NCBI GenBank assembly: GCA_977020255.1
Contig: CDROCS010002096.1
Location: 1 to 64,000, forward strand
Source of the DNA: Obrimoposthia wandeli
Lineage: Eukaryota
DNA length: 64,000 bases
Direction of reading: 5' to 3'
Part shown: positions 7,864-30,287 of the stretch, piece after piece
How positions within the stretch are numbered: position 1 is the first letter of the stretch
Layout: each line of letters opens with the position of its first letter
Program-made: the position numbers and the translations under genes
Notes under the pieces: model-generated
Database searches by the model: none
Seen by the model: the letters and a program-made list of their open reading frames with translations, nothing else
What the model was told of the DNA's origin: nothing

Positions 7864-8530
7864 TCATAAGAAACTTTCAAGCAAAAACACAATAGACTCA
7901 ACTTGACAATGATAATCAAAATCTTTAATACCATGAATAATCGCTTTTCTACTAGCAAACACATAACACATAGAGTATTAAACTTTAAAATTCTGAGTGC
8001 TGGAAACAATTCTGGTTCAAACATACAATTTCTTCCCATTTTCATAGATATCTTATACAAATTAACCTTCTTGTTGATATTCACTAGGATACTTAGAGAT
8101 TGAATACGTTCAATTTCTATATTTTGAGCATGTTTGATTGGTTGTTTGCAACCCATAATNNNNNNNNNNNNNNNNNNNNNNNNNNNNNNNNNNNNNNNNN
8201 NNNNNNNNNNNNNNNNNNNNNNNNNNNNNNNNNNNNNNNNNNNNNNNNNNNNNNNNNNNNNNNNNNNNNNNNNNNNNNNNNNNNNNNNNNNNNNNNNNNN
8301 NNNNNNNNNNNNNNNNNNNNNNNNNNNNNNNNNNNNNNNNNNNNNNNNNNNNNNNNNNNNNNNNNNNNNNNNNNNNNNNNNNNNNNNNNNNNNNNNNNNN
8401 NNNNNNNNNNNNNNNNNNTAGTATAATCCTTTAACTTTTCAAGATATTGTATAGGTTTCTTTGATCGAAAAGGTAAGTGACTAACACTTCCCTTAAATTT
8501 ACTTTTATAATTTATATTGATTATTTTCAT
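7864..8530 (-). pseudogene. TBP-like gene of E1; assembly gap 8160-8418; one frameshift
   Basis: MKIININYK...MGCK...IQSLSILVNINKKVNL...CMFEPELFPAL...VFAS(R)KAIIHG...ESFL* follows the TBP repeat pattern. Confidence 0.85.
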
Positions 8531-14047: not shown

Positions 14048-14535
14048 AGTAGGTGGATGTGTCCGGTCTAATCCACACACCCCCTCCCCCCTTGTCCTTT
14101 AAAACCGTACATGTGTGTGGAGTGAAATTTCGTGTAGGCGTGTGGAGTGAAATTTCACTCCACACACATGCACGGTTTTAAAGGACAAGGGGGGGTTACC
14201 CCCCCCCACTAAAAATTTTTCGCGCCTTTCGGCGCGAAGGCTCGGGACAGATATAGGTCACAGACTAGCTCTGCGATGTACGGATGTCTCGCTCTCATAT
14301 ATGTCACAGACTAGCTCTGCGATGTACGGATGTCTCGCTCTCATATATGTCACAGACTAGCTTGGCGATGTACGAATGTCTCGCTCTCGTGTATATCACT
14401 AACTACCTCGGGTGATGGGTGAAAGTCGACGGGTGTTGGATGGAAACACCCAACCGACGACAACCCGCCCCTACGGGGCGGGCTCTATTCTCACGAAAAT
14501 AACAAAGATGGGCATCTACAGGCACGAAAAAACAT
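14048..14535 (+). repeat. Left TIR of E2, with nested palindrome and 3 x 46-bp tandem repeats
   Basis: Palindrome at about 14088-14193; 46-bp units start at 14251, 14297 and 14343; hairpin CCCGCCCC-TACG-GGGCGGG near 14464. Confidence 0.9.
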
Positions 14536-14683
14536 TACAAAAAATAAATTATTTGAATAAGAGGCTCTCATTGGACAATAAAAGAGGGTTAGTAAGATGT
14601 TTGTGTATATAAAGACACCCCCGTTCATTATTTTTCATAAATCAACAATCCCATTCTACAACAACGTTGACCTAGACGAAGAG

Positions 14684-16049
14684 ATGGAGGTTCAACTCTA
14701 TGGGGATCTCTCTCCAGTGCAGCAGCGAACGCCACCATCGTCGCAATACGTTGACTTAGATAGTCAAGAGTCATCGGTGGTGAGCGAAGGAGAAGCAGCA
14801 GCAAGAGCAAACCTGTTACAAGAAGAAGCCTCATTGGCCAGCTCAACTCCAAGAGAAGAACCAATGGACGTGAGAGGTGGGGTACAGAGATCCCAATATA
14901 TCGATCTGACTAGTCAGGATTCGATAGAGAATTGGGAAGACTGTACTCCCAGACAAAACACAAAACCCAATCGTCCGGCAACTTCAGCAGTAGCAGCAGG
15001 GAGATCCAATCTCTTCGACAATTTTGAGGCGGCAATCAAATGCCCCTGGAAATTGATCCCGCTGTCTCAACTGGAGAAAGTCCTCGCACCAGACTCAGAC
15101 AAGGAGCTGTTCACCGATGATGTACCTTCGGATTGGGAGGAGGACTTGACTTCATTTATCAACGAATGGATACAGCCAAGTAGGCGACGCCTATTCAACC
15201 GGTGGATAGGAAGCAAGCGGCAGTTAAGAAACCGCAACGCCATAGGGTCAAAACCCTCACTCGGAAGAAGGCCAAGTTGGTGAAACAGGCTAACCTGCCC
15301 ATCATTGAGGTAAATTATTTATATGTTTAAATTTTATTAATATTTTGCAGGAACCCGTCCAGATATTTGAGGAGACTTGGGGAGAAATTACTCCTTTCTC
15401 GCGGAAACGGACGAAGAGGGCAGAGGTGAAGAAGACGAGGCACTCGAGAAAATGTAAAACCTCAATTGGCCATTATTCTGAGGCGGTGATTGGCCAGCAG
15501 GAGATTCTCCAATCTCCAGTGGACGACGGACCAATCCTATATGAGAGGATCCCAGTCTCGCCGATCGAGATAAGTCCGCAATCAAGTCAACGACGCCTGC
15601 AGGAGACTGCTTCTCCTCATCCAACAACCAGCCAGAACTTGAAGAGGGCCTGGGATGAAGCTGGATTGGATGAATTCCTGGCGGAACTGGATTCACCGGC
15701 AATGCTTCCAGATTTGCGTGGGCAACAAGATGCCGTCTCACGCCAGCTTCAACGTGAGAAGGAGGAGAAACAGAAGAAAGCTCCGCGGAAGAGAAAGAGG
15801 ACTTCTATGACAGGGCCATCAACATCGGCTGCACCTCCTCCCAAAAAGTTGCGGCAACTATTGCCAAAACCTGAGGGAAGGACAATTGCTACAAAGCAAC
15901 CGGTGAAGCCGAAAAAGAAACCGGGCCGGCCAAAGAAGAAGGAACCAGTACCGATTTCTCCTATAATACTTAGTCGGAGGGATTACGACCCGAATGATCC
16001 CAATGATGACTTCGTAAAGATGTTTAAAAATATAATTTATAAAAATTAG
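14684..16049 (+). pseudogene. E2 early ORF1: disordered protein with SIM-like, acidic, NLS and AT-hook-like motifs; 41-nt intron 15310-15350
   Basis: TATATAAAG at 14606. ATC ATT GAG|gtaaat...ttgcag|GAA CCC splices in frame with ORF 15345. This join requires a frameshift and a stop near 15165-15185. Motifs: YVDLD, YIDLT, PRKRKR, KKPGRPKKK. Confidence 0.55.
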
Positions 16050-16243
16050 TTTCATATGTTTTCTTCTTAATATTTATTTTTTTAAATGTAGAAATACTAT
16101 CTTTAAGTTTATTTGCAATGATAAGTTATAGATTTATTAAACTCTCATTTGATAAATAAAAATATATCATTTAATTGGATTAAAAAATATCTTAAATTTA
16201 TATATATAGGTTCAAATTTATTAACCTCTTCATAATTAAAAAA

Positions 16244-16606
16244 ATGGAATTCATTAAAATGAAGAGTCTGGTGACGAAGATTGAAGCAAACATCAGAATA
16301 AATGAGAAGAAAGGGGACTTAAGAAAGAGGGTCCTCAACCAGAATTTGTATACTGCTGTCGCGACAGAGTGGAATCATCGGGTGGAGATACAGGATAGGA
16401 GGCTAGCAGAACGCCGTCGAATCGTGGAGTGGAATAAGAAGATCGAATTGGAAAAAAGGAAGGTGGATGAAAAAAGAAGAGAAGAGATGGAGGATGTTCG
16501 GCGAGCAGCAAGAAAGAGAATCCTCCAGATTAAACCGGAAGAGGGTCCTTCTACAAAAAAATTAATTTTTGATTATTATTTTGTCTTTATTGATTATGTT
16601 ACATAG
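16244..16606 (+). CDS. E2 early ORF2, coiled-coil K/R/E-rich protein with weak SERTA-like motif
   Basis: Intact 120-aa ORF with GC-richer coding composition; LRKRVLNQN. Confidence 0.6.
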   Translation: MEFIKMKSLVTKIEANIRINEKKGDLRKRVLNQNLYTAVATEWNHRVEIQDRRLAERRRIVEWNKKIELEKRKVDEKRREEMEDVRRAARKRILQIKPEEGPSTKKLIFDYYFVFIDYVT

Positions 16607-16686
16607 GAGAATTGACAAAATATACCAATCTTATCATGAAAGTACTTCGTTATAAACAACGGGATTTGCTGCAAATTTAGATAATT

Positions 16687-17175
16687 ATGCAGGAATATAT
16701 CATAGATTTTGAGGCTTTCATTAACAAAAATGGGGATTATATTATAAAAGAATTATGTATTATGGATGTATGCGACGTTTTTCATCCATTGCATTTCATA
16801 TTTCAAATAGATATCCCGTTTAAAAGTTTAGATTATAAGAAAAGATTTACTAATTTATATCTAACTAATTATTTTCATTTATTAAAATGGAAAGAAGGAC
16901 ATAAGGCTTTTTGTGAAATATGTATTTTCGATACTATTAAATCTAATTTTGATATTGAAAATGGATTTTTTTATGTTTTAGATGAAATGGATGGCAAAAA
17001 GTATAAGACTTTAAAAAAATATTTTTCCAAATTGAGGTTGAATACTTTAAATATTTCACGCGATCATCTATTAAAAATTCCACGAAATATTTGCTGTCCA
17101 TATTGTAATCATGGTGACCATTGCGCATATAAAAAATGTTTAAGTCTTTCTTATTATTACTGGAAATTCTTCTAA
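16687..17175 (+). CDS. E2 ORF3, putative DnaQ/DEDD-like nuclease-fold protein with C-terminal Cys/His cluster
   Basis: N-terminal IIDFEAF...IIKEL (DxE motif) and CCPYCNHGDHCAYKKC. Family assignment is from recalled pattern only. Confidence 0.55.
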   Translation: MQEYIIDFEAFINKNGDYIIKELCIMDVCDVFHPLHFIFQIDIPFKSLDYKKRFTNLYLTNYFHLLKWKEGHKAFCEICIFDTIKSNFDIENGFFYVLDEMDGKKYKTLKKYFSKLRLNTLNISRDHLLKIPRNICCPYCNHGDHCAYKKCLSLSYYYWKFF

Positions 17176-17400
17176 TTGGATAAATTCATTATTAAAATTT
17201 TACAATTATTTAGATAAACAATTCTTCTAATTGGAGAAATTCATTATTAAAATTTTACAATTATTTACAAATAAGCCATTTGATTGGAGGAATAAAAAAA
17301 TATTTTTTTCGACCATTTAACAGATAAACAAACCTTCTCAATTTTTTAATCCAATAGGAAAAGAGCATGTGTGCATAAATTTTTGTATATAAGCAAACAC
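17171..17400 (+). promoter_or_regulatory. pPolB promoter: 55-bp-period duplication, four CCAAT boxes and a TATA box
   Basis: TCTAATTGG(A)..AAATTCATTATTAAAATTTTACAATTATTTA at 17171 and 17226; ATTGG near 17284; CCAAT near 17352; TATATAAG near 17386. Confidence 0.55.
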
Positions 17401-17433
17401 TTTCTTCATTTAAATCCCCGACAATTTGAAATA

Positions 17434-20400
17434 ATGCCTATGGTAAGAATTTATTTTTATTATTTCCTTATTAATATTTATTATTTCAGATTACTTGTAA
17501 CCTATTCCCTGCGTATTGTGGTGCTTCGGCTCCACATGGAGGAGAGACCTGCATGGAGACAATGTCTGCATACTACCGGACAAAGTCTCAAGGTGTTCAC
17601 TTCTTTGTCTGCCCCTTCTGCAGAACAATGGAGGAGAAGGAGTTTCGAGACTTCTTCAGTGAACATCGAGCTCATCTATCGTGTTTCACGGCCAACAAGA
17701 AGAGGGATATCGTCCAGTTGGTGCGCGATTCGCAGGTCGCTCCACCTCCAATTCCAGTTGCAGTCGATCAACCCTTTTACGGTCCTGCGATTGGTCTCCC
17801 GGCTCCTGATTCTGACCCATCCACTCAAATGTCTGAATGGGTGAATGACATATCCCAGTCAGATTTCGAGATAGAGCAGTGCAGCGATAACTCATGGTTG
17901 GAGACCATCGAGGAATCCGGTTTTGTCGAGTCAACGGACGACAGCTGGATGGATTCCATCAATGAAGAGGACTTCATTCCAGCTCAACTTGGATTGTCAT
18001 CATTAGGTTTTTTTTTTTTTTTGTAAATTGTAATTATATATTTTATTTTTTAATATATATATTTTATTTTTTATTCAGGAAATACCGTTCTACAATCGGC
18101 ATCTGCTACAACAGATATGCCTCCACCATCGCGAGTGCCTACATCGATGTTAGCACGCCTTAGAGGTCATTTTTAAAAATATATTTATTTTTTAATATAT
18201 TAATTTCAGCACATGCATCATCGACGTCCACAACAGTCGCTTCAATGACATCAGCTACTGATGATCGAGTGACCATGACGTCTACAAGCGCATCATCTGC
18301 GAAACCAGCATTAGTTGCCTCACCTACAACACGAGCTGCAATTGCCTCAACATCGGCAGCATGTCCAATAGCAGCACCTACAACCTCAGCTGCGATTGTG
18401 TCAACTATTAATATAAATAGTTGTCTTCCCGTTCAATTAGGGGGAGGTTTGTCAGCGACAAACGGAAGAAAGAGGCGAGGCCAATTTCTTAATAAGGTCC
18501 CACCAAAAAAACGTAGAGAAAACGGTGCTACTATAGAGTATCACCTAAATAATAAATATGTTATAGTTAAGGTGCCATTAGGAAATGAAATTTTATTAAA
18601 TGTAGGTGTAGATTCAAATATTGAAAATCTTTTAAAATCAGAATTGACTAAATTAGGACAGGCTAAGGTTCAATTTTGCGCAACAGTGCAGTTTAAAAAT
18701 GTCAATGAGAAAACTAAAACTTGGGTAATTTCACATAAAGCAACTGTTTTCTATGATAATTTTGTAACTGAAATTGGAAGAAACCTGGATGAAAAAATTG
18801 CTAATTATAGCGAGTTAAGTAGTGGATGGACTCTAGTTAGAATTCACGATGTTAGCTTTGTTCTAACAAAGTTCACTGACATGATATATCTTTCGGGGAG
18901 TTCATACATTCCTTCACCTAGATCTCTTCAACTTTTACGTTCCATTGTTAACGTACAAAACAGTGATAACCTTTGCTTTCTGTATAGCGTGTTGGCCATC
19001 CTCGAAAGGGATGTAATTACTGAACATAGAGAGCGTGTCAGTAAATATACCCCTTTTTTAAATGAATTGCAGTATCATGGAATAGATTTTCCAGTTAAAT
19101 TAACTGCGATATCAAGATTTGAACATCTTAATAACTTGAGTATTAATGTATTCAAATATAATACTGATATCCCAGTTAATGTAACAGATGAAGAAATTTT
19201 TAAAAATCCTTTTGTAGATGTAATTTATAGGAGCAAAAATGAGGTGACTCAGGTCAACTTAATTTTGCTCGAACATAATAAAAAATTCCATTATGCTGCA
19301 ATTCCCAATTTAGATCGTCTTCTAAATTTAGATATTGGAGCCTTACCGGTTAGGATAAGGTGTAAGTGGTGTCATAGATGTTTGCATGCTCTAATCCGAG
19401 CTCTCTTACAGCAAACATCTGACATTATGTTCACTGAATCCTGATGACAATACGCTATATAGCATGCCTAAGGATAAGGATTTAAAATTCAGGGATTGGG
19501 CAAAATGCATACCCGTGGAATTCAGGGTGTATGCAGATTTTGAGTCAATTTTAGCATTGCACGACCAGTATGAGAGTATTCACCTACCGGCTTCGGCAGG
19601 ACTACTATTCTTAAGCCCCAATATTACCCAGTATCATAAATTTTCCGGTCCAAATTGTATTTTAGATTTTATGTTAAAATTAGAGGAATTAAGAACAACA
19701 ATTGTCAAACCGTGGTATGATCTCAATGCTCATCAAGCAATGATCATGACAGGCATAGACTGGGTTAATTTTAATTCTTGTAGATTATGTTATTTGTGTG
19801 GAACCCAGTCTAAGTTAGTCAGAGATCACGATCATGTTACGGGGCGATACTTGGGAGCGGCATGCAACCTTTGTAACCTTGGCCGTCGTCTCCCTAAAAA
19901 ACCACGCATTCCCATCGTGTTTCATAACCTTAAAGGATATGATTTGCATCATATACTTAAATACGCGTTGGGTACATTAAGCTCTTGGGAAATTTCATGT
20001 ATACCTCAAACTTCAGAGAAATATTAATCTTTAACTGCATATACTGAATTCTGCAGTTTAAGATTCATAGATTCTCTGCAGTTTTTGAGCAGGTCTTTAA
20101 AAAATTTAACGGCATCTTTAAATGCATGGCCAATTACACAGTCAGTGTTCCCAGCTTCGGTTAACGATAAGGGGATTTTTCCGTATAAATTTGCGAAAAC
20201 TTTCGCAGATTTAGAAAATACAACGGAAATCCCACCCATAACTGAATTTGAAAGTCTAAGTCTTCAAGACTATAATGAGGCCCGTAAATTTTGGGTGAAT
20301 AATTGTCGAAATCTTTAGAATATATGCTTTATTATATGAAGTTAGACATTTATCTTTTAGCTGATGTTTTTGAGTCCTTTCGTGTAAAGTCTTTAGCAGA

Positions 20401-21820
20401 AGATGGGCTAGATCCCATGCATTTCTTTATTTTACCTGGTCTTTCATGGGCAACAGCAATAAAAACTCTTAAAATTAATATCGAGTTACTGCAAGATCCC
20501 GCGATGTATCAAATGTATGATTATGGTATACGCGGTGGAATGACTTTTGTCAACAAACATCATGTTGTCAAAAATCAATCCACAGAGATTCTGTACATCG
20601 ATATTAATAATTTGTATGGGTGGGCGCTTACTCAACCTCTACCTCATGCCAACTTTAAGTGGGTTTATGATGTGGATCAGTTGAATAAGTTGATGACAGA
20701 TTTGGCTACTGTTGATACAGTTTCATCCGACGTTGGCTATTTGGTTGAGGTGGACATAAAGATCCCTCCCAATGTGCATGATAAATTAGATGATTTTCCA
20801 GCAGCGCCTGTTCATCAATGCCCACCTAATTCAAAGGTTAAGAAATTATTGTTAACCCATGAAGACAAGTTGAATTATGTTGTGCATTGGCGGCTTCTTC
20901 AATTCTACTTAAAGTTGGGAGCGAAAGTTACTCGAATTCATCGTGCTATAAGCTTCAGTCAAAACTTTGTGTTTAAAGACTATATTGAGAAGAATTCAAG
21001 AAAACGTAATTTGGCCACTAGCAAATTCGATCGAGATTTTTACAAGTTAAAAAGTAATAGTCTCTTTGGAAAAACGGTAGAGGACTTGCGGAAACGTATT
21101 TGTCTACGGTTTTGCAATGATGAGCGTAAACTAATAACATATACTAGCAAGTACAACTTCAAGCGTAATCTTTCAATTGCATATGATTTGGTAGCAGTGG
21201 TATTAGGAAAACAGAGTATTTGTCTCGATCGACCGAGTTATATAGGTCAAACGGTTTTAAACATTTCCAAACTCAGAATGTACAAGCTCCAATATATAGA
21301 ATTAGAGAAATATCGCCACGAATTCAATTGTGAGATTAAAATCGCAGCTGGGGACACTGACTCTTTCTTTTTAGAATGTAGGAATGTTAGTTTAAATAAT
21401 CAATTATTACCAGCAATGTTTAGGGACAACTTACTAGATACCCATAAATATCCCGCTAACCATCCTCTACACTCTATGAGTTTAAAGGACATTATCGGGA
21501 AATTTAAGGATGAAAGCGAGGGACAGGTTTCGTATGATGATTGTATTTTCCTACGCCCTAAATGCTACAGTTTACATACATCTAATAATACATGTTCAAT
21601 GAGAGCAAAGGGTGTTGGAAGAAACAATCTTACACATGAGGCCTACCGGAAAGTTTATGATACTGGGTGTATTGAAAGCGTTGAGCAAACTAGATTTATT
21701 TCAAGAGCCCATCAACTGTATTCCCATAAATCAACAAAGATCGCTTTGAGTAGTAATGACGACAAGCGCTTTTGGGTAAAAAAGAACGCTAGCTTGGCTT
21801 ATGGACACTTCAGAATTTAA
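17434..21820 (+). pseudogene. pPolB of E2 with spliced N-terminal extension; exons 17434-17442, 17490-18006, 18079-18165, 18210-21820
   Basis: All three GT-AG introns (47, 72, 44 nt) keep the frame. vOTU-like NVQNSDNLCF...HYAAI; YADFES; RDHDHVTG; FHNLKGYD; YIDINNLYG; KSNSLFGK; DTDS. Frameshifts near 19390 and 20312; TAA at 20025. Confidence 0.93.
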
Positions 21821-22096
21821 ACGGTTTTCATATTTTGATTTTTTTAGTTTAGTTTTTTTAAATTTTAGATCCCTATGGCACCTAGACTCTAACTTATTTG
21901 TTATTGCAATACTTTTTAGGATGGACCTTATTTATTATGCCTTATCTTTGCTGACATATCTCATTGTGATGTTGTTTTTAATAAATGTATTAAAAAAAAA
22001 TTCGTCTTATGTCTTTTATTATTTTACCCTTATATTTTTAGGGATTTAAAAAATAATTCAAAATAAAACATTTAAAATTTTTATTTTTATAACACA

Positions 22097-22477
22097 CTAA
22101 TCGTTTTGCAACGATAACCATAAAATACATAAATGTCCACAGTTTCTCGTCGCAGGATCCTGATATTGTATCTTGTTGTAAAATACTCTTCTTCGTCCTT
22201 TTTGAATAGTTGAAACAAGTTTGTAGGGATAATACATTGCAAGTGGATCAAATACATGTATTGTCCACTCTCTAACATAAATAGCTATCCAATGTTCTCC
22301 TGGTAAATTCGAAGTATGAGTATTGATAATGTAACCTCCATATTGAAAAAATGGAATCATATCAATAGGATAAACTCCATTGAATTTATCACCCAGGACC
22401 TTCTCTGCTGATTTTTTTACTTGTTTTGAACTAAATAAAATTTAATAAATATAAATTTAAAATATGTCTTACTCCAT
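22097..22477 (-). CDS. Adenain-like cysteine protease of E2; 5-nt first exon, 42-nt intron 22472-22431
   Basis: ATG GA|gtaag...ttag|T TCA gives MDSKQVKK...GVYPIDMIP. Catalytic GEHW, FDP, QDPATRNCG. ORF intact. Confidence 0.92.
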
Positions 22478-22478
22478 T

Positions 22479-23709
22479 CTATAATATGACAGTTCTGTTT
22501 TTATTGATTTGTATTTCCGAATCAAATACTCCGTAAATAAGCACCGTAGTAGGATGGGTTAAAGCTGCATTGAACTTAATTTCTAGTCGTAAATTTCCAT
22601 CCTTTGGTAGTTGGCATTGGTTTATATCAAAGTCTGGTGCTAAAACAAATGTGAAGAACGGGCAGCTATTTTTAAAGTCAGTGAAAGAAATACCATTGTT
22701 TATATTTTTATCTAGTTGACCCAAATTCCGAATAATAGATTGGGTATAAGCCAAAGCATAAGCGTTACCTTCGAAATCTGTTTTATATGTTTCACGACAA
22801 TCAGTATTTCTTGAAAGTGTCACTGAACCAACATTAAGATTGTCAAATTGAGTTGCATCTGTCGTATAATTTCCTAGAAACTTTGCAGTTTTTTAAAAAG
22901 AAATTAAAATGAATTTCGGTAATCTTACATCACCAAAAATTTGATCCTTATTAAAAGCTTATGTACCCGTACCTAAAGAATAAGATATAAGTTTAGTTTC
23001 TCTAATAGGATAACAAGCATTGTTTTTTTCCATTCCTATATTATGCGCCATTAAAACTGACTGCTCGGTTTTAACTCTTCGAACATACAATTTTGCATCC
23101 AAAATATCAAGTCTAGGTTTTATAAATGTCCGTGCTTATCAAAGAAAATTTCCATTTATTATGTTTCAAACGAAGATGTACATTAACACCGGGAATTAAA
23201 TATTTCGGTTGTTCAAAGAAATTCAATCTCAAAGACCCACACATTTCGTAAGCTTTAGAACCTGCAATCCATTCTTTGCGAGTTGCAACAGTTTTATCAT
23301 AACCAATGGTTGCCAAATTAGTATTTTGAGTATCAGTACTATAATTCAAAAGACTTTCAATCAAAGCTTTATGAGCATAGGAAGAATTTCCACCTTTAAT
23401 TTTGACATTATTAAGAGTAACAATGGCATCATTAAATAAAGAATTAAAGAGATAATTTACAGGTGTTACATCGGCATTTTCATCTAAATTAGTACCATCC
23501 CGATTTAATACTTTTATTTGAACATAAAGCAAAGTATCATTCAAATCTAAATACTCGCTATTGGAACCATTAATATTAAATTCTAAATCGGTTAAAGTGG
23601 TTCCTGAAACTGAGTTAACTAGGAATATTTCTTCAAAGGAAGCATTATCTACAACTACTTGTGGAAGCGGTTTATCAAAAATACATAATTCAGTTTTGGC
23701 GCAACTCAT
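22479..23709 (-). pseudogene. Major capsid protein (double jelly-roll) of E2
   Basis: MSCAKTELCIFDKP, LDLNDTLLY, KYLIPGV, GNLRLEIKF. One frameshift near 23120 and two in-frame TAA codons near 22960 and 22893. Confidence 0.92.
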
Positions 23710-24083
23710 TTTGCAAATATTGTTCCTTCAACTTTCTTACGTTTGTTTATATTAATTTTTAGCTTCTTTTTACTTTTAAATCCACTACCTCCTTGGCTTT
23801 TATTTGATTTACGTTTTCTAATCAAATTTACAACTTCAGGTAAAACATTATCAAGTTCATCAAGCGCATGCTTCTTAAAAGTTGGTATTAGTTTATTGTC
23901 ATTAGATGAAAGGTAATCCTTTCCTAATTTTGATATAAATCACCCGAGTCTCTTTAAAAGAGGAAAGGCAAATCTACCTAATGTTCTAAGCCAGCCAGAT
24001 CAGTATTGTTTACCAACAAAATATGGTAATTCTCCACCTTGTTGGCTTTGACTATAAGCTTCAATTATTGCTGGATTCGCCAT
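23706..24083 (-). pseudogene. Small basic virion core-type protein with Q-x-G-G sites
   Basis: MANPAIIEAYSQSQQGGELPYFVGKQY*SGWLRTLGRFAFPLLKRLG*...SQGGSG plus a K-rich tail. Its stop overlaps the MCP ATG (ATGA). Not in the ORF track because of two stops. Confidence 0.8.
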
Positions 24084-25115
24084 TTTGTTTTCTTAAATGT
24101 ATTGTTAAACTTGTCTTGGCTCCGTACGTGAAATCTATTAGTTGTCCGGAATCATCTCTAATATTTACTTCAATATTGTTTATAGAAAAGAGAGAAACTG
24201 GAAGATACATTGGTTGATCTATACACATACCGACAGTGTCCCCATCTCTAGTTTCATTTTTAGATATCCATATTATTCTCAAAAGTGGAACTCGCTGTCC
24301 TCCTACAAGCGTTGGTTCTATTAAATTAGTATAAATATATAAATGATTAACAGCATTTAAATGTTTTGCCTTATTTTTAGCTTTTATGGTTTTTATTGTA
24401 TGGGTTTCAAAGGTATTTCTGTTTAAATCAAGGTTTTTAGCGAGTTTATCATCAAATGAAACTCGTTTTATATTGCTCTTTACTGTAAACGTTAATTTAC
24501 CATTTAATGTTTCACATTTATCGAAATATTCACTACATTCCTTCTGTATTAATTTACAGAAATTCACTTCACTATCTATTTTATAATCTTTTGAAAACGT
24601 TTTCAGTTCCACAGTCTTTGGTCTCGTTTCAAGTAACAAAACTTTTGCTACTCTACCAGGAACATTTCTAACCAAATTAGATGAGATAATATCCCGTTTA
24701 TTACGAGCTACTGTTTGTTCACTATCAAAACTGAATTGAAGAGCTTCTTTTTTAGATTCAAAATTAATTTTCATAACTTGAAGAAATTTTAATCGATTTT
24801 TAAATCTGACTTTGTTATTTTCAAATATTACTTTCACTTCTTTATCTATACAATTGTAATAGAATTGTCCTTTACTATCAAACCCGATCACAACTTCAGT
24901 TGTTTTTTCATGATCAACTTCTTTTGTAAACGAAATATGTGAGTTTTTTTGATGGTAATTGGAGAATAATAAAAAGAAAATTCTGTTAAAGCCGCTTCCC
25001 ATTCTCCTTGGAGATTTATAGAATTTTCCCAATCGATAATAAAGCTACTAGCGTCATTATCTGGTTGAGTCTTCGGACATCCGTTACTTGGTAAAACCAT
25101 ATACATAGACTTCAT
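24061..25115 (-). pseudogene. Minor capsid (penton-like) protein of E2
   Basis: MYMVLPSN...QGEWEAALTEFSF, then a frameshift near 24930, then YIYTNLIEPTLVGGQRVPLLR...YLPVS...IEVNIRDDSG. Confidence 0.88.
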
Positions 25116-26191
25116 ATTATATTAGATGCTGATATCCTAGTTGGGTCTGAATAACCATGCCATTTAACAAAGTATTGTTTATGTTTACCTGTACCCTTAG
25201 ATTTTAATATTTTTTGAATACGGAAAACGCTAGGTTTATTTGATATTACTTGTAATTCTTGCTCATAAAATTTACCGTGAACGATATTATTGTCAGCATC
25301 TTTAATAGTATACATTATTGGATTACTCTTTTGATCAATTTTACTTATACAAAATATTTCATCGCTCCAATTCTGATCAAAGTTTTTAATAAATGGAGTA
25401 GAGCTAATTTTCGAAATTCGAACATATTCGTTTTTCTTATATTAAGCTTTTTTAATTTTATCTTTTTTATTGCTGTTCATCCAAATTTCCATAGAGTTTT
25501 TATTAGTAACATCAACAGGTCTCATTCCCTTGAGACCTCTATGTTCAGAGTGATTATATGCATGTATTATTTTAGGTAAAACTTGGATCCATTTTTTATT
25601 TCCTTCTTTTGTGAAATACTTTTTTATTCGATCTCTTAGAGTACGATTAAATCTTTCTACTACTGCTGCTTTGTATTGTGAAAATACACAGTAATGATTT
25701 ATATTATTTTGTTTAAATAATGATTGAACTTGCTTATTATAAAATTCTTTTCCTAAATCAGTTTGCACATTTTGTGGAATGTCCTCTTTTAATATTTCTT
25801 TAATGGCTTCAAGCATAGCTATTGAAGACTTTGCTTTAACTGGAATTGCACGAGCAAACCTGCTAAATACATCAATACATGTTAAAATATATCGATATCC
25901 CTTATTAATGGAAGAATATGGGATCATCTCCATCAAATCCATTTGCCATAAATTATTAGGACCGCTGGTTTTGTAAGCTCTAGTTGGAAACCTTCTCATC
26001 GGCTTGTTCAGACTGTAGGCTAACTGGTCGCTCAGCCATTTCTGCGTTTTCTTGTAATTTTGTTTTGTTCTTTTTGCTAATTTTGAAACTCCTGTGTAGC
26101 CAATTGGATCTTTTGGATTGAACCATATCTTCTCCATTACAACAATTTGAATAGAAAGAAAATTTAAGTTTAAGTAAAGAAGGGCTAGCAC
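25112..26191 (-). pseudogene. Retroviral-like (rve) integrase with C-terminal chromodomain-like region
   Basis: WQMDL, IDVFSRF, QTDLGKEF, VERFNRTL; tail IQKILKSKGTGKHKQYFVKWHGY. One in-frame TAA at 25442; the frame continues to 25112. Confidence 0.93.
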
Positions 26192-26223
26192 CCATATCTT
26201 TAGCTGATTTTAGAAATAATTGT

Positions 26224-26550
26224 TTATGAACGTGTCGCAGCTATAATACTACTGATAATTGAAGCAACTGGAATAACAGCCCCTATGAAACCACCATTCT
26301 GTTTAAGAATAATATTTCGTTTCCTTTTTTTACTTTTTACATTAGCAATATCTAGAAGAGTTTTTCTATATTTCTTTAATATATTTTTACGATTTCCAAC
26401 TTTTACTCGACCCAAAACTATATTATACAAAACTTCCAATAAATCATCTACAACAAAGAATGGAAATGCTTTAAGAATAATCATTCTCTTATTAGAAGAG
26501 GCTTTGACTAAAGCTTTAAAATAGGGTATGCTTCTTTGTATTTTCTTCAT
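26224..26550 (-). CDS. Conserved Polinton small protein (PX / gasdermin-X-type) with amphipathic tail after QNGG
   Basis: LLEVLYNIVLGRV...KQNGGFIGAVIPVASIISSII; intact ORF. Confidence 0.7.
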   Translation of the reverse strand: MKKIQRSIPYFKALVKASSNKRMIILKAFPFFVVDDLLEVLYNIVLGRVKVGNRKNILKKYRKTLLDIANVKSKKRKRNIILKQNGGFIGAVIPVASIISSIIAATRS

Positions 26551-26729
26551 TTTAATAAAAAAGGTTCAATTTAAATATTGTTTATATTCGAAGCCATTTA
26601 AGTTTTATTTTATTTTTAACTAATGATTTGATTAATTTTTTCACTTCTTTTTTCTTAATGATTCTTTTTTTTGATTTCTTAGATTTTACTTTACGTTTTA
26701 CTATCAACTTTGTAAAAGGCATTGCGAAT

Positions 26730-27378
26730 TTATTTTTTATAATTGTTCTCTATTTGTTTATAAACAGTTACTCCCTTAGAATTAAATATGTCTGTTAAAA
26801 CACGTAAATCATCTGGGCAAGCTTGTGTAAAGTCAATAAATATATACCCATGTGCTTGTTTAGCAGCATCGTGGAATGAATCAACTAGAAAGTTCTTATT
26901 TTGAGGAAATGCCTGTCTGGCCACAAAATCAACAACTGTTTGATCTCTAGGATTTTTAAATAAAACTAAGTAATGTACATTAAGATTTCTTGTTCTATGG
27001 TGACCTCCTTTGGTGAAACAGATTTTGAGTGATAAATATAACTGTTACTTCACGATGTCTTGCAATCTTTGTAAATAAATTATTAAAGTCCGATTCCTTG
27101 TTAGCCTCCTCATACAAATCATCAATTATTATTACATCTTCTTTTTTCAATCTTTCACAACAATTTGCATCAAATCCTTCAATAAATTTTATACCCTTCA
27201 ACTTGCAAACTTCTGTTTTGGTTAACCCGCTTTCCCCTCCTCCACCATGATGCCAATAAATATTTTTGAAACTAGATTTGAAAAGAGAATCATTTTGCAA
27301 CAATTTACAGACGAAATGTGTCTTTCCACTTCCACTTGGGCCAACTATTTGAAATACAGCATTATTATTTAGCTCCAT
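26730..27378 (-). pseudogene. A32/FtsK-like genome packaging ATPase of E2
   Basis: Walker A GPSGSGKT, Walker B IIIDD, RH..VTVIFITQNLF. A frameshift near 27000 leads into LNVHYLVLFKNPRD...GYIFID. Confidence 0.92.
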
Positions 27379-27415
27379 TGCATATACTCTTTCATTTTTA
27401 ATATTGTTTATATTA

Positions 27416-27688
27416 TCATAGAAGTTTCCTTATTGAAATGTACAATGTTAGAGCTATTGTAGATGAAATACAAAAATTAATTAATGAATATTTGACTATA
27501 ATTTTATTTATTTGTGTACGATTTCTAAATTCTCGAATAACGTGTGATCTAACCAATATTTCAATGTTATCTCTTGTTATATCATTATTTTTTAATTCTG
27601 ATAAAATTTCTTTACCCCTAATTTTTCCAGAAAATATTTCATCGGCAAGCCGATCCACTTCATTGTCTCTATTTATAGTATTATTCAT
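27416..27688 (-). CDS. Small conserved Polinton protein with hydrophobic C-terminus
   Basis: 90 aa from ATG 27688; homologue at 6807-6959. It appears fused to TBP only through two extra T residues near 27722. Confidence 0.65.
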   Translation of the reverse strand: MNNTINRDNEVDRLADEIFSGKIRGKEILSELKNNDITRDNIEILVRSHVIREFRNRTQINKIIVKYSLINFCISSTIALTLYISIRKLL

Positions 27689-27716
27689 TTGAAACAATAA
27701 GTTTAAACGGGTTTGT

Positions 27717-28218
27717 TTATAGAAAAAAGATAACAAGATGTAATAAGATATATTTTCTAAAATCAAATCAGCTATATCTGGATAATCAAAATTTTTCAAT
27801 CCCAATATCATAACTTTACCACTGGAAAATATATTTACACATAGCGGTTTAAACTTCAAATAACTGAGAGCAGGAAAAATTTCTGGTTCAAACATGCATT
27901 CTTCTTTCACTTTCTCTGCAGTTTTAAAAAGATTTATCTTTTTCCCAAGATTAGCCGAAATCGTGATTGATTGTATTGCAGTGATTTGAATTCCAAATGG
28001 TAAATTGAACCCAAGCATGGGTATTTTGCATCCCATAACACGACAATTTCCTAAAGAATTCAATATGAAAATAAAATAAAAAACTAACCTGTAGGAAAAA
28101 TAACAACTGTGAAATTGTCAAACTTTTCTACATATTGTCTCGGCTTCCATTCATTGAATGGTAAGTACGAAACATCATCTTCTGTTCTACCTTTATAATT
28201 TATATTTACGAGTTTCAT
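27717..28218 (-). CDS. TATA-binding-protein-like gene of E2; exons 28218-28089 and 28050-27717; 38-nt intron
   Basis: Spliced product MKLVNINYK...TVVIFPT-G-NCRVMGCK...IQSITISANLGKKINL...FEPEIFPAL...VNIFSSGKVMILGLK shows both TBP repeats. The natural stop is inferred from E1 and E3 (both end FL*). Confidence 0.88.
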
Positions 28219-28464
28219 TAGACTGAAATTGTATTCTGTAAAATCTTCTTTATATATGTCTGAACCTGCTTTTTTATTGGACGTTTCTTGTAATTATCTT
28301 GCAAACCTATTATAATTGGATGATATATTTAGTCCAATCAAATTCAATGCTTTTGTTATATTAACCAATGAGATTCATGTTTTTGTTAGAAATTAGTATA
28401 AAAGAATGCGCCATTGGAGGACAAATCACAGTAAATGCATTCATATCAAAGACAATTATCAACG
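28219..28464. promoter_or_regulatory. Divergent promoter between the TBP-like and SSB-like genes
   Basis: TATATAAAG on minus (28256-28248), TATAAAAG on plus (28397-28404), five CCAAT/ATTGG boxes (28276, 28315, 28334, 28365, 28413). Both TATA boxes are retained in E3. Confidence 0.65.
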
Positions 28465-28911
28465 ATGGACGATAGCCAACGGGTATTAGGCGATGACGAA
28501 GAAATGTTTGAAGAATCGGATAAGGATATGTATGAAGAAGTGAAACAATATTTCAAATACAAATACAAATTCTTGAAGAAGGCTCAGCTGATTGCTTTAG
28601 TAAATCCTGTGACAATTGAAAGAAGAAAGTTTAGCTACTATCTATCCGGTATTCAAAAACCTGATTTTCAATATCTTAAACAGAAAATAGAAAAGGCAGT
28701 TCCGAATTTTACTTTCAATAAGAACGAATTTTATATCCGAGGAGCCGATGAAGCATTTCTAGATGACTATGGAAGATATGTTGATATTGATGCGTTTCCG
28801 AAAAAGAAGCAATGGACTGTAACAATTCGACTTTATGGTTACAAGAAAGATGAAATGGGAACAAAGTTGCCTATGTGGAAAATTGAACGTGCTCATATTT
28901 CTATGTTTTAA
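28435..28911 (+). CDS. Conserved Polinton protein, possible SSB, copy 1
   Basis: Intact ORF, likely start 28465; homologous to 8651-9151 and to E3 44744-45187. Confidence 0.7.
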   Translation: MHSYQRQLSTMDDSQRVLGDDEEMFEESDKDMYEEVKQYFKYKYKFLKKAQLIALVNPVTIERRKFSYYLSGIQKPDFQYLKQKIEKAVPNFTFNKNEFYIRGADEAFLDDYGRYVDIDAFPKKKQWTVTIRLYGYKKDEMGTKLPMWKIERAHISMF

Positions 28912-29043
28912 CTTTTGTGTGTAATAAATTGTAATCGGTTTTACTATGTTTCTTTCATTTAATAATCAGTTTTATTTGTATCTTATTTATATCCTATGTG
29001 TATTTTTTATAAACATTGTTTTTAATCAGTTTCCTTATTTTAG

Positions 29044-29422
29044 AATGGATAAGAGATGTGTAGCAAATTTTTATTATTCAGAAAGAATTTCAAAAGGAAA
29101 ACTATGTAATATATTAAAGAGGCATCAAATTATACGAATTATGAATCCTGTGAAAATATCAAAAGTGGAGAAAAAATATCTCATCGAAATTTTAACAACA
29201 ACTGATTTTGATCAACTGAAAAATATTTTGGGATTTTACATTCCTGATTATGTATATGAAGGAAATTGTTTCGAGCTTGAAACTGATCCCAGTCTGGATT
29301 TTAAAGATGATCTAGGATATTTGATTGCTCCAATTCTAGATGAAGAACTATGGAATATCTCAATACGTCTGAATGGATATTTTGCTGATGACGGGAAAAT
29401 GCAGCCTCTGGACTTTGAGTGA
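29044..29422 (+). CDS. Paralogue of the preceding gene, copy 2
   Basis: Starts MDKRC after an AG acceptor-like site. WNISIRLNGYFADDGKMQP resembles WTVTIRLYGYKKDEMGTKLP. Also present in E3. Confidence 0.65.
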
Positions 29423-29517
29423 AGCCAATATGTTGTTTTATGTTTAATAAATATTTTGAAAAATAATTTTGTCTCGTATTTTATTTTTGCTCCTCTAAAT
29501 TATATAGATCTGATCGA

Positions 29518-30287
29518 TGTTTTTCGTGCCTGTAGATCAAGAATGAAGCCCGCCCCGAAGGGACGGATGGTGTATGTTAGGGTATGACACGGGTCGTTTA
29601 CATTTGTAGTTGTGAGAGTAGCATGTTTTTGTAGTTATTTTCGCGAGAATGGAGNNNNNNNNNNNNNNNNNNNNNNNNNNNNNNNNNNNNNNNNNNNNNN
29701 NNNNNNNNNNNNNNNNNNNNNNNNNNNNNNNNNNNNNNNNNNNNNNNNNNNNNNNNNNNNNNNNNNNNNNNNNNNNNNNNNNNNNNNNNNNNNNNNNNNN
29801 NNNNNNNNNNNNNNNNNNNGCCCCAAAGGGGCGGGTGGTGGTCGGTTGGGTGTTTCCATCCAACACCCGTCAACTTTCACCCATCACCCGAGGTAGTTAG
29901 TGATATACACGAGAGCGAGACATCCGTACATCGCAGAGCTAGTCTGTGACCTATATGAGAGCGAGACATTCGTACATCGCAGAGCTAGTCTGTGACATAT
30001 ATGAGAGCGAGACATCCGTACATCGCAGAGCTAGTCTGTGACCTATATGAGAGCGAGACATCCGTACATTGCAGAGCTAGTCTGTGACCTATATCAGTCC
30101 CGAGCCCTTCGCGCCAAAAGGCGCGAAAAATGTTTAGGGGGGTACCCCCACCCCCTGTCCTTTAAAACTGTGCATGTGTGTGGAGTGAAATTTTACTCCA
30201 CACACCTACACGAATTTTCACTCCACACACCTACACGGTTTTAAAGGACAAGGGGGGTGTGGATTAGACCGGACACATCCACCTACT
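29518..30287 (-). repeat. Right TIR of E2, with 4 x 46-bp repeats; assembly gap 29655-29819
   Basis: Reverse complement of the left TIR. Units start at 29911, 29957, 30003 and 30049. About 100 extra nt at the inner edge. Confidence 0.9.

What the first reader, a model, noticed from the sequence alone, without database searches (positions are those of the whole stretch)
27717..28218. Polintons encoding their own TATA-binding-protein homologue, retained in two divergent families
Seen: after removing a 38-nt intron, E2 encodes an ~155-aa protein with both TBP repeats (LVNIN..TVVIFPTGNCRVMGCK and IQSITIS..FEPEIFPAL..VNIFSSGKVMILG). Three of the four intercalating Phe positions appear conserved; the first-repeat stirrup Phe is not evident. 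Syntenic homologues occur in divergent E1 (7864-8530) and in E3 (43992-44489). Known: TBP-like genes occur in some large DNA viruses, but they are not part of the canonical Polinton gene set I know. Inference: an ancestral element gene acting as a private or late promoter-recognition factor, or as a decoy for host TFIID/TFIIB.
Basis: partly seen in the sequence, partly recalled or inferred. Interest (0 to 1): 0.92.

Follow-up and report, generated by a model that had tools for sequence, protein, structure and literature searches.

The report
Polinton gene for a shortened TBP
A virus-like mobile element in this genome carries its own stripped-down TATA-binding protein; the gene is a standard, conserved part of a whole lineage of such elements, and it probably switches on their particle-building genes through a shared TATAAACA promoter motif.

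Summary
The gene is real. It lies on the minus strand: exon 1 is 28218-28089, a 38-nt GT..AG intron is 28088-28051, and exon 2 starts at 28050. The spliced product matches a family profile end to end (177 bits) and keeps every invariant residue. Pfam TBP hits exon 2 (46 bits, cutoff 22.9). Two AlphaFold models of close relatives (pLDDT 93 and 97) match only TBPs in the PDB.

"Both TBP repeats" is only half right. The C half is a complete repeat. The N half is about 55 residues of four strands with no helices.

E2 (14048-30287) is a true Polinton. It has a 6-bp target duplication, inverted terminal repeats, protein-primed PolB, rve integrase, A32-like ATPase and an adenain-like protease. Several E2 genes are broken. 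E3 is a decayed E2-like fragment, and E1 is a divergent, decayed relative.

At least 279 clusters of roughly 150-residue homologues exist, nearly all in metagenomes. Every contig long enough to judge places the gene among the same Polinton genes.

New here: TATAAACA sits about 34 nt before 31 of 94 element genes (1.2 expected). It precedes the ATPase and the candidate capsid gene, but never the TBP, integrase or PolB genes.

One 2021 figure legend already labels a "TBP" gene. I rate this a new variant of a known kind.

The parts
14048..30287 (.). Element E2: a 16.2-kb Polinton flanked by the 6-bp target-site duplication GACATA (14042-14047 and 30288-30293). Its termini read AGTAGG...
   Evidence: The inverted terminal repeats align from 14048 and to 30287 with identical outermost bases, and GACATA flanks both ends. 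The TIR arms are 96% complementary over 229 nt.
14048..14479 (.). Left terminal inverted repeat of E2, containing 46-nt tandem sub-repeats
29820..30287 (.). Right terminal inverted repeat of E2. It adjoins the N gap at 29655-29819, which was left unfilled.
28089..28218 (-). TBP-like gene, exon 1 (43 codons plus 1 nt). It encodes the first three strands of the helix-less N half.
   Evidence: It scores 39 bits alone against the family HMM.
28051..28088 (-). 38-nt intron (GTTAGT...CTTTAG, 84% A+T)
   Evidence: There are exactly 38 extra nt relative to intronless relatives. E3 shares it with GT/AG kept. The unspliced frame stops at codon 44.
27416..28050 (-). TBP-like gene, exon 2 as assembled. 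The family-homologous body ends near 27746 (residue 145 of the spliced product). The frame then stays open to 27416, about 100 codons beyond where relatives end, running through a small downstream ORF.
28248..28256 (-). TATA-like box (TATATAAAG) 38 nt before the TBP-like ATG; conserved in E3
28397..28404 (+). TATA-like box (TATAAAAG) 38 nt before the ATG of the divergent gene 28435-28911; conserved in E3
27714..27721 (-). TATAAACA promoter-like motif at the end of the TBP-like body, upstream of the small downstream ORF
27405..27412 (-). TATAAACA motif 27-34 nt before the ATPase ATG
23744..23751 (-). TATAAACA motif before the ORF~407-like (candidate capsid) gene
16651..16658 (+). TATAAACA motif before the Cys/His-rich ORF16x gene
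26745..27378 (-). A32-like packaging ATPase (broken: 1 frameshift)
   Evidence: Pfam Pox_A32. It is 75% identical to the intact L007/L008 ATPases and lies in two frames with 1 extra nt.
25115..26209 (-). rve integrase (broken: 1 in-frame stop)
   Evidence: Pfam rve E=1e-13
22482..23709 (-). Homologue of the conserved ORF~405-412, a candidate capsid protein whose fold was not tested (broken: 2 stops, 1 frameshift)
22100..22441 (-). Adenain-like (Peptidase_C5) protease homologue
   Evidence: The Pfam hit is weak. Intact relatives carry Peptidase_C5 marks rated 'weak' or 'faint'. Homology is shown.
18497..21817 (+). [quoted passage not shown]
   Evidence: It covers 97% of L008 ORF1135. It is 53% identical to the L009 PolB fragment, which hits Pfam DNA_pol_B_2 at E=3e-9. 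Endonuclease_7 appears.
16687..17175 (+). Cys/His-rich ORF16x, the gene that adjoins the TBP-like gene in L002, L003, L005 and L006
28435..28911 (+). Divergently transcribed gene of unknown function. It is syntenic with the TBP-like gene in E1, E3, L008 and L009 and has a paralogue at 28946-29422.
7864..8530 (-). E1 copy of the TBP-like gene. It is 52% aa identical to E2 over 117 codons, has 1 frameshift and no stop in the alignable parts. The N gap 8160-8418 hides the exon junction and was left unfilled.
43992..44489 (-). E3 copy of the TBP-like gene, a pseudogene. It is 83% nt identical to E2. Against the E2 frame it has 3 frameshifting length differences and 4 stops. The intron is kept.

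Best explanation
The gene encodes a lineage-specific, structurally reduced paralogue of TATA-binding protein. It is a core gene of one lineage of Polintons (Mavericks, 'MELD' viruses).

Shown:
- It has the TBP saddle fold: a complete C-terminal repeat plus a helix-less four-stranded N-terminal half.
- Three of the four TBP DNA-kinking Phe positions are invariant.
- The acidic 'EPE-x-FP' stirrup motif of the C repeat is kept.
- It is conserved in synteny across many intact metagenomic relatives and has been under long-term purifying selection.
- The elements carry a strand-specific TATAAACA(A) motif about 34 nt before the start codons of the ATPase, the candidate capsid gene, the protease, ORF16x and small ORFs. 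The motif is absent before the TBP-like, integrase and PolB genes. The TBP-like gene instead has a plain TATA[AT]A box in 4 of 6 cases.

Inferred:
- Host TBP and RNA polymerase II first express the element's TBP-like gene from its ordinary TATA promoter.
- The product then binds the TATAAACA boxes through its concave sheet.
- Through its intact C-terminal stirrup it recruits host TFIIB and RNA polymerase II to turn on the morphogenesis ('late') genes.
- Because the N-half helices are gone, it would lack the surfaces that host TBP regulators use. By textbook knowledge of TBP complexes these are the TFIIA side and the NC2, Mot1 and TAF1 contacts. That would make the switch private to the element.

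In this particular genome the three copies are relics of past integrations. Only the E2 gene body is still intact.
For: Fold:
- Pfam TBP gives 46 bits against a cutoff of 22.9.
- A profile search of PDB sequences returns only TBPs; the best is 1mp9 at E=4e-18.
- AlphaFold models have pLDDT 92.6 and 96.7 with the same topology.
- The Foldseek PDB top 44 hits are all TBP, E about 2e-8, query-normalised TM 0.57-0.71.
- The BFVD search returns giant-virus TBP-likes and the herpesvirus BcRF1/UL87 class.

Conserved residues:
- F43, M51, E100, F102, N116 and F118 are invariant in 52 members, and all are present in E2.

Family and context:
- The representative search gives 55 hits at E<=1e-30. Most of the 150 best-scoring proteins listed are about 140-180 residues long and match the profile nearly end to end.
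- The word-indexed search gives 279 clusters.
- The gene neighbourhood is Polinton-type in L002, L005-L010, L013, L014, L017 and L021.
- E2 itself is a Polinton, with TSD, TIRs, PolB, integrase, ATPase and protease.

Selection:
- E1 versus E2 gives dN/dS 0.23.

Motif:
- The window has 21 matches against 9.4 +/- 3.2 expected, and no shuffle of 100 reaches 21. Sixteen matches lie inside E1, E2 or E3.
- In relatives, 31 of 94 genes carry it against 1.2 expected, and it is the top 8-mer found de novo.
- The modal distance to the ATG is 34 nt, and the strand bias is 36:4.
- By gene family: ATPase 5/6, small ORF 5/5, ORF~405-412 6/6, ORF16x 3/4, protease 2/4; TBP-like 0/6, integrase 0/5, PolB 0/3.
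- The motif persists in relatives with G+C from 0.29 to 0.43.
Against: - No binding, expression or timing data exist. The link between the protein and the motif is co-occurrence only.
- TATAAACA contains an ordinary TATA box that host TBP could read.
- Integrase genes overlap the preceding ORF. Their lack of the motif may simply reflect co-transcription.
- One sub-lineage of contigs carrying a TBP-like gene (L018, L019, L022, L028) lacks the motif.
- Every relative I could examine has both the gene and the motif or lacks the motif. I have no lineage with the motif but without the gene, so the association was not tested by absence.
- The N half may not position an intercalating residue, so DNA bending could differ from TBP.
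- In this window E2 has six other genes with at least one break each, and its TBP-like frame overruns the family's end. Function in this host is therefore unlikely.
Confidence: 0.45

Rival explanations
1. General TBP substitute or competitor. The protein binds ordinary TATA boxes or host TFIIB. It either boosts all element transcription or acts as a decoy that damps host TATA-dependent transcription. On this view TATAAACA is simply the element's version of a host TATA box, read by host TBP.
For: The TBP fold and the conserved C-repeat stirrup motif are present. The loss of the N-half helices would remove regulator-binding surfaces, as expected for a dominant competitor. The motif contains a canonical TATAAA core.
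Against: The 'ACA(A)' extension is conserved across relatives of very different base composition. It is confined to a subset of gene families at a fixed distance. A generic TATA box would not need that. The window's non-element DNA shows no excess of the motif: 5 matches in about 36 kb, roughly the chance rate.
Confidence: 0.2
2. A DNA-bending architectural protein with a non-transcriptional role. It would use the TBP sheet to bend A+T-rich DNA at the termini or origin, or in genome packaging or condensation.
For: The gene sits directly upstream of the packaging ATPase in E2 and in L007-L010. TBP-fold domains are used for other nucleic-acid tasks elsewhere; this is general knowledge and was not tested here.
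Against: The position next to the ATPase is not universal. In L005, L006, L013 and L017 the gene follows protease-ORF16x. The E2 TIR sub-repeats are not TATA-like. The retained TFIIB-type stirrup motif has no obvious use in packaging.
Confidence: 0.12
3. For the window itself the copies are non-functional relics. Nothing here is 'retained' by the host, and the intact E2 body reflects only the youth of that insertion.
For: - E3 has 3 frameshifting length differences and 4 stops against the E2 frame. E2-E3 dN/dS is 0.67.
- E1 has 1 frameshift, and its PolB has 19-26 stops.
- In E2 the ATPase, integrase, ORF~407, ORF~109, ORF~350 and PolB each carry at least one break. The TBP-like frame overruns the family end.
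Against: This is compatible with the best explanation, which concerns the active viral lineage. It is a rival only to a claim of host-level retention or domestication. The E2 gene body has no stop or frameshift and keeps all 17 conserved residues.
Confidence: 0.75
4. A recent one-off capture of the host's own TBP gene by one element.
For: The gene carries a spliceosomal-type intron in E2 and E3.
Against: Identity to any solved cellular TBP is 20-26%. The N half is remodelled in the same way in more than 50 diverse members. Synteny is conserved in many intronless relatives. The divergent E1 also has the gene. The intron is therefore a later gain in the E2/E3 line.
Confidence: 0.02

Closest known systems
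Cellular and archaeal TATA-binding protein (Pfam PF00352; e.g. PDB 1mp9, 2z8u, 3eik, 1ytb, 1cdw as returned by the searches)
   Same: It has the saddle fold and a complete C-terminal repeat, S1-H1-S2-S3-S4-S5-H2. Both Phe of the C repeat and the 'EPE-x-FP' stirrup motif are conserved. The 'IF-x-SGK' hairpin is present in both halves.
   Different: It is about 150 residues against a core of about 180. The N half has four strands and no helices. There is no N-terminal low-complexity domain. Identity is 20-26%. It is encoded by a mobile virus-like element.
Herpesvirus late-gene TBP mimics (BcRF1 / ORF24 / UL87 class). These read a variant TATT box and recruit RNA polymerase II. Their role is from my own knowledge of the literature; the structural hits are.
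   Same: The proposed logic is the same: a virus-encoded TBP-fold protein plus a variant TATA-like late promoter in a nuclear DNA virus that uses the host polymerase.
   Different: Those proteins are far larger, with a TBP-like domain embedded in a 500-1000-residue protein. Structural similarity is weaker (E about 3e-3, TM about 0.3). The motif differs, and no accessory complex was identified here.
TBP-like proteins of giant viruses (the Heterosigma akashiwo virus, mimivirus-relative, marseillevirus and asfarvirus B263R-like entries returned by BFVD)
   Same: They are virus-encoded TBP homologues, and Foldseek E-values reach 2e-7.
   Different: Those are about 190-400 residues with two helix-bearing repeats. 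They work with a virus-encoded RNA polymerase in the cytoplasm. Polintons encode no RNA polymerase.
'TBP' gene label on a MELD-virus map in Starrett et al. 2021, Virus Evolution 7:veaa055 (PMC8502044, Fig. 5 legend)
   Same: It is a Polinton-like element with adintovirus-like PolB and integrase from non-animal datasets, carrying a gene 'similar to TATA binding proteins'. The same legend lists TRAF, and L007 also carries TRAF/MATH genes.
   Different: It is only a label. No structure, family, synteny, promoter or selection analysis is given. I could not see the figure, so identity with this family is probable but unverified.

Membership tests
TBP family (Pfam PF00352, TBP-like saddle) | Significant match to the TBP repeat profile | tested here: met
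   The E2 exon-2 product scores 46.3 bits, E=3.7e-12, against a cutoff of 22.9. Relatives score 47-74 bits.
TBP family (Pfam PF00352, TBP-like saddle) | Two complete tandem repeats, each S1-H1-S2-S3-S4-S5-H2, forming a pseudo-symmetric saddle | tested here: not met
   In both models the C half is complete, while the N half has four strands and no helices. N-half to C-half profile similarity covers 14 columns only. PDB profile hits align only to profile positions of about 56-150.
TBP family (Pfam PF00352, TBP-like saddle) | Overall 3D similarity to solved TBPs | tested here: met
   The Foldseek top 44 PDB hits are all TBP: E from 2e-8 to 3e-6, probability 1.00, query-normalised TM 0.57-0.71. 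The next hit has E=0.036. These are models of relatives (P0002, P0018), not of the window's own product.
TBP family (Pfam PF00352, TBP-like saddle) | A pair of DNA-kinking Phe residues in each repeat | tested here: inconclusive
   The C-half pair is invariant (F102, F118). The N half has one invariant Phe (F43). A majority-conserved Phe lies about 21 residues upstream in a loop, and its geometry could not be checked.
TBP family (Pfam PF00352, TBP-like saddle) | Acidic C-terminal stirrup used for TFIIB contact (sequence motif) | tested here: met
   The 'EPE-x-FP' motif is conserved, E100 is invariant, and it aligns with 'YEPEQFPGL' of archaeal TBP. Actual TFIIB binding is not testable here.
TBP family (Pfam PF00352, TBP-like saddle) | Sequence-specific binding and bending of TATA DNA | not testable with these tools
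   The only evidence is indirect: TATAAACA is enriched upstream of element genes.
Polinton / Maverick elements | [quoted passage not shown] | tested here: met
   E2 18497-21817 covers 97% of L008 ORF1135. It matches the L009 and L010 proteins that hit Pfam DNA_pol_B_2. The E2 copy has 1 stop and 1 frame change.
Polinton / Maverick elements | Retrovirus-like (rve) integrase | tested here: met
   Pfam rve E=1e-13. Relatives add a chromodomain. The E2 copy has 1 stop.
Polinton / Maverick elements | Long terminal inverted repeats and a 6-bp target-site duplication | tested here: met
   TIRs of about 430 nt. GACATA lies on both flanks.
Polinton / Maverick elements | A32/FtsK-type packaging ATPase and adenain-like cysteine protease | tested here: met
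   Pox_A32 E=1.3e-6. The Peptidase_C5 signal is weak in E2 (E=0.045). In relatives the precomputed Peptidase_C5 mark is 'weak' or 'faint'.
Polinton / Maverick elements | Double jelly-roll major and single jelly-roll minor capsid proteins | not tested
   The candidate ORFs (~405-412 and ~346-370 residues) have no Pfam or PDB sequence hit.

The most novel reading that the evidence does not exclude
One Polinton lineage runs a self-contained two-step transcription programme in the host nucleus. A minimal 'one-and-a-half-repeat' TBP, made early from an ordinary TATA promoter, specifically reads a private TATAAACA box and redirects host RNA polymerase II to the capsid and packaging genes. This would be the first temporal switch described for Polintons. 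It would also be the smallest natural TBP, showing that half of the saddle's helical upper surface is dispensable.
Probability: 0.35. Interest if true: 0.8.

Novelty: new variant of a known kind. Interest (0 to 1): 0.62.

Why it matters
Polintons are thought to be ancestral to several groups of eukaryotic DNA viruses, yet how they control their own genes is essentially unknown. A conserved element-encoded TBP, together with a conserved, class-specific promoter box, gives a concrete model that can be tested by sequence and expression data. The model is an early/late switch of the kind known from large nuclear DNA viruses.

The protein is also a natural experiment on TBP itself. It keeps the DNA-facing sheet and the TFIIB-side stirrup but has lost the helices of the first repeat.

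Practically, the roughly 150-residue family and the TATAAACA box are new markers for recognising and annotating this Polinton lineage in genomes and metagenomes. At present these proteins are unnamed or auto-named as cellular TBP.

Tried and rejected
- Exon 1 alone gives no Pfam TBP hit.
- Two pattern scans of IMG/VR viral contigs found no relative. The family is not in that catalogue at this sensitivity.
- I could not identify the host. Exact look-ups of two window proteins found nothing. Rfam and tRNA scans of the window were empty. The host remains unknown: 28% G+C, Tc1/mariner elements, sparse ORFs.
- Pfam and PDB sequence searches of the candidate capsid ORFs, of the syntenic upstream gene family (A3) and of the Cys/His ORF16x family (A4) gave nothing.
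- A nucleotide-level E1-E2 alignment was too noisy at about 70% identity. I replaced it with piecewise protein-guided codon comparison.
- A CCAAT-like TGATTGG box upstream of the TBP-like gene is seen only in E1, E2 and L007 and is not general.
- The bacterial promoter/terminator scan is uninformative here.
- I made no phylogeny with TRF2, TRF3 and giant-virus TBPs. Comparators cannot be fetched by name, and only about 80 alignable columns exist. The argument against recent capture rests on architecture, score gap and synteny.
- Literature searches for Polinton or Maverick with TBP or TATA found only the Starrett et al. label.

- While reading ORF lists I also worked out, in my reasoning, where some frame breaks lie. 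None of those places is given in notes, script output or this report.
Full report
**1. The observation**

The finding's gene is on the minus strand. An ATG at 28218 opens a 44-codon ORF (MKLVNINYKG...FPTG) that runs into a stop. Downstream lies a 38-nt, 84% A+T stretch with GTTAGT...CTTTAG ends (28088-28051). After it the frame reopens with NCRVMGCK....

Joining the two exons as they stand gives a product whose junction (FPTG|NCRVMGCK) is uninterrupted in every intronless relative recovered. Four further results support the splice model:
- tblastn with relatives' proteins shows exactly 38 extra genomic nt at that point. The frame changes in two other E2 genes, the ATPase and the ORF~407 homologue, involve 1 extra nt.
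- E3 keeps the insert (36 nt) with GT and AG.
- A family HMM matches the spliced product as one domain: 177 bits, profile 1-150 of 154, residues 1-145. Exon 1 alone scores 39 bits and exon 2 alone 122 bits.
- All 6 invariant and 11 near-invariant family residues are present.

The splice model is therefore supported by relatives. E1 cannot be checked, because the N gap 8160-8418 covers the junction. I left that gap alone.

Two details differ from the finding. In E2 as assembled, the frame set by the splice model does not meet the stop at 27717. It stays open for 254 codons, to 27416, and runs through a small downstream ORF. E3 and the relatives end at about 145-160 residues.

**2. What the protein is**

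- Pfam TBP (PF00352) hits the exon-2 product at 46 bits against a cutoff of 22.9, and hits relatives at 47-74 bits.
- A family profile searched against PDB sequences returns only TBPs. The best is Sulfolobus 1mp9 at E=4e-18. Only profile positions of about 56-150 align, and they align to both repeats of TBP.
- I made AlphaFold models of two relatives: P0002 (52% identical to E2 over the exon-2 region; pLDDT 92.6) and P0018 from the closest related element, L007 (pLDDT 96.7, 52-sequence alignment).
- Both models give the same topology. The N half is about 55 residues, with four strands and no helices. The C half has the full S1-H1-S2-S3-S4-S5-H2 repeat.
- The Foldseek top 44 PDB hits are all TBPs (E about 2e-8, TM 0.57-0.71, identity 20-26%). 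The next hit has E=0.036.
- Against viral models the hits are giant-virus TBP-likes and, more weakly, the herpesvirus BcRF1/UL87 class.
- hhalign of the N half against the C half finds only a 14-column match, the IF-x-SGK...MG hairpin (probability 86%).

So 'both TBP repeats' is half right. This is a one-and-a-half-repeat TBP.

F43, F102 and F118 are invariant in 52 diverse members. F102 and F118 align with the Phe of 'FPGL' and of 'IFSSGK' in archaeal TBP. These are 17 residues apart, as for the known kinking pair. The acidic 'EPE-x-FP' stirrup motif, the TFIIB-contact region in textbook TBP complexes, is conserved, and E100 is invariant.

I could not submit the window's own spliced product by reference, so the structural statements rest on the relatives and on the HMM match.

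**3. The element**

E2 spans 14048-30287. Its termini read AGTAGG..., its TIRs are about 430 nt and carry 46-nt sub-repeats, and the 6-bp duplication GACATA lies on both flanks. It encodes:
- an rve integrase (Pfam E=1e-13) and an A32-like ATPase;
- an adenain-like protease (weak in E2; 'weak' or 'faint' precomputed marks in relatives);
- a protein-primed PolB with an Endonuclease-VII-like insert. E2 18497-21817 covers 97% of an intact 1135-residue relative, and relatives hit Pfam DNA_pol_B_2.

It is a genuine Polinton. Capsid proteins were not recognisable by sequence.

Break counts against intact relatives:

| E2 gene | Breaks |
|---|---|
| ATPase | 1 frameshift |
| Integrase | 1 stop |
| ORF~407 homologue | 2 stops, 1 frameshift |
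| ORF~109 homologue | 2 stops |
| ORF~350 homologue | 1 frame change |
| PolB | 1 stop, 1 frame change |
| TBP-like gene | None in the family-length body; one frame difference at the extreme 3' end, so the usual stop is missed |

E3 (about 43584-46000) is a fragment 79-92% identical to E2, with about 1.7 kb missing between the integrase and the TBP-like gene. Against the E2 frame its TBP-like copy has 3 frameshifting length differences and 4 stops. E2-E3 dN/dS is 0.67.

E1 (from the window start to about 9150) is a divergent relative:
- Its TBP-like copy is 52% identical to E2 over 117 codons, with 1 frameshift and no stop.
- dN/dS is 0.23 with saturated dS.
- Its PolB carries 19-26 stops.
- No ATPase or integrase is detectable.

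**4. The family beyond this genome**

A single-sequence search found 8 metagenomic proteins. An exhaustive profile search of 1.84 billion representatives found 2572 hits at E<=1e-3, 423 at E<=1e-10 and 55 at E<=1e-30. Most of the 150 best-scoring proteins listed are about 140-180 residues long and match the profile nearly end to end. A profile search through the word index found 279 clusters at E<=1e-8. Nearly all come from ENA, JGI, Logan or MGnify assemblies. JGI auto-names them 'TATA-box binding protein'.

Contexts:
- L005, L006, L013 and L017 read ATPase - small ORF - integrase (rve plus chromodomain) - ORF~346 - ORF~409 - protease - ORF16x - TBP.
- L007, L008, L009 and L010 read TBP - (small ORFs) - ATPase - small ORF - integrase - ... 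- ORF~405-412 - ... - PolB. This is the E2 order.
- L008 and L009 were chosen by integrase similarity, yet both carry the gene.
- Of 25 close loci from the JGI scan, 17 have at least one gene of this set beside the TBP-like gene. The other eight are all 3 kb or shorter.
- All these relatives are intronless, so the E2/E3 intron is a later gain.
- IMG/VR holds no relative.

**5. A promoter motif (new here)**

Upstream regions of the relatives' genes share TATAAACA(A).
- In the window the 8-mer occurs 21 times against 9.4 +/- 3.2 expected, and no shuffle of 100 reaches 21. Sixteen of the matches lie inside E1, E2 or E3, nearly all on the strand of the neighbouring element genes.
- In L006-L010 it is the top 8-mer in the -60..-16 window: 31 of 94 called genes against 1.2 expected.
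- The first T lies a modal 34 nt before the ATG. Occurrences are 36:4 in favour of the gene strand.

| Gene family | Genes with the exact motif |
|---|---|
| ATPase | 5 of 6 (6 of 6 relaxed) |
| Small ORF before the integrase | 5 of 5 |
| ORF~405-412 | 6 of 6 |
| ORF16x | 3 of 4 |
| Protease | 2 of 4 |
| TBP-like | 0 of 6 |
| Integrase | 0 of 5 |
| PolB | 0 of 3 |

The TBP-like genes instead have a plain TATA[AT]A box in 4 of 6 cases.

The motif persists in relatives with G+C from 0.29 to 0.43. It is absent from one sub-lineage, the L018 type, where TCATAATT abuts the ATG.

**6. Mechanism**

The best-supported reading is a private late-promoter factor. Host machinery expresses the TBP-like gene. 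Its product binds the TATAAACA boxes and nucleates host polymerase II complexes on the morphogenesis genes.

Shown: the fold, the conservation, the synteny, the selection, and the motif with its class distribution. Inferred: DNA specificity, TFIIB recruitment, timing, and insulation from host TBP regulators through loss of the N-half helices. Confidence is about 0.45.

Rivals are a general substitute or decoy (0.2), an architectural or packaging role (0.12), and recent host capture (0.02, contradicted). Separately, the window's own copies are most likely relics (0.75).

**7. Comparison and novelty**

The closest functional analogue is the herpesvirus late-gene TBP mimic with its variant TATT box (my knowledge; structural hits). 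The closest sequence and fold relatives are cellular and archaeal TBPs. Giant-virus TBP-likes are the nearest viral precedent.

For Polintons the only precedent I found is a 'TBP' label in the Fig. 5 legend of Starrett et al. 2021 (PMC8502044). Two foundational Polinton-like-virus papers do not mention TBP, TATA or promoters, and other searches were empty.

I therefore rate it a new variant of a known kind: virus-encoded TBP homologues. The unreported features are the reduced architecture, the size and synteny of the family, and the associated promoter motif.

**8. Declared slips**

While reading ORF lists I located some frame breaks in my reasoning. No such place appears in notes, script output or this report.

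Noticed in passing
window 14251-14399 and 29911-30094: The E2 terminal inverted repeats contain 3-4 tandem copies of a 46-nt unit (93-96% matches). This could be a binding array for a replication or integration protein.
   Followed up: partly
window 14597-16049: There is a G+C-rich island (0.48 against 0.28 overall) just inside the left TIR of E2. Its two ORFs (228 and 234 residues) are rich in Ser, Pro, Glu and Lys and look disordered. They have no Pfam hit and could be terminal or core proteins.
   Followed up: partly
window 19464-20027; L008 11383-14790: The protein-primed PolB of this lineage carries an Endonuclease-VII-like domain (Pfam PF02945, E about 1e-5) in its N-terminal third.
   Followed up: partly
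window 16687-17175; alignment A4: The ORF16x family has invariant Cys/His positions and an N-terminal 'F-x-D-F-E' stretch. It may be a zinc-binding nuclease or exonuclease. It is the immediate neighbour of the TBP-like gene in several relatives. It has no PDB sequence hit.
   Followed up: partly
L005 6071-6078, L006 6855-6862, window 43989-43996: In several relatives and in E3 the stop codon of the TBP-like gene is the TAA embedded in the next gene's TATAAACA box. The gene end and the next promoter overlap.
   Followed up: yes
L007 854-1858 and 5476-6447: Two TRAF/MATH-domain genes sit on a relative's contig, each preceded by TATAAACA at the usual distance. They are likely cargo genes of the element. 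The Starrett et al. legend also lists TRAF.
   Followed up: partly
L018, L019, L022, L028: This sub-lineage of contigs carries a TBP-like gene but lacks TATAAACA. Several of its genes, including the TBP-like one, have TCATAATT directly before the ATG. This may be a different promoter grammar co-varying with the protein.
   Followed up: no
window 28280-28340 and 8590-8600; L007 about 7315-7340: CCAAT-box-like TGATTGG/CCAATCA lies 60-120 nt upstream of the TBP-like gene in E2, E1 and L007 only. The background rate is 0.04 per 150 nt.
   Followed up: yes
window 52686-54055: A Tc1/mariner element has TIRs of about 100 nt (93-98% complementary) and an uninterrupted 351-residue DDE_3 transposase ORF (52850-53905). 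A second Tc3-type HTH ORF lies at 54410-55111.
   Followed up: partly
window 61822-62289: Nine tandem copies of a 39-nt unit (a 13-residue repeat) lie inside a 363-codon ORF. The ORF is next to a CCCH zinc-finger/Torus-domain gene (60308-61375, minus strand), which is probably a host gene.
   Followed up: no
window 28946-29422: This is a tandem paralogue (about 29% identity) of the divergent gene 28435-28911. The family (A3) is syntenic with the TBP-like gene in E1, E3, L008 and L009 and has unknown function.
   Followed up: partly
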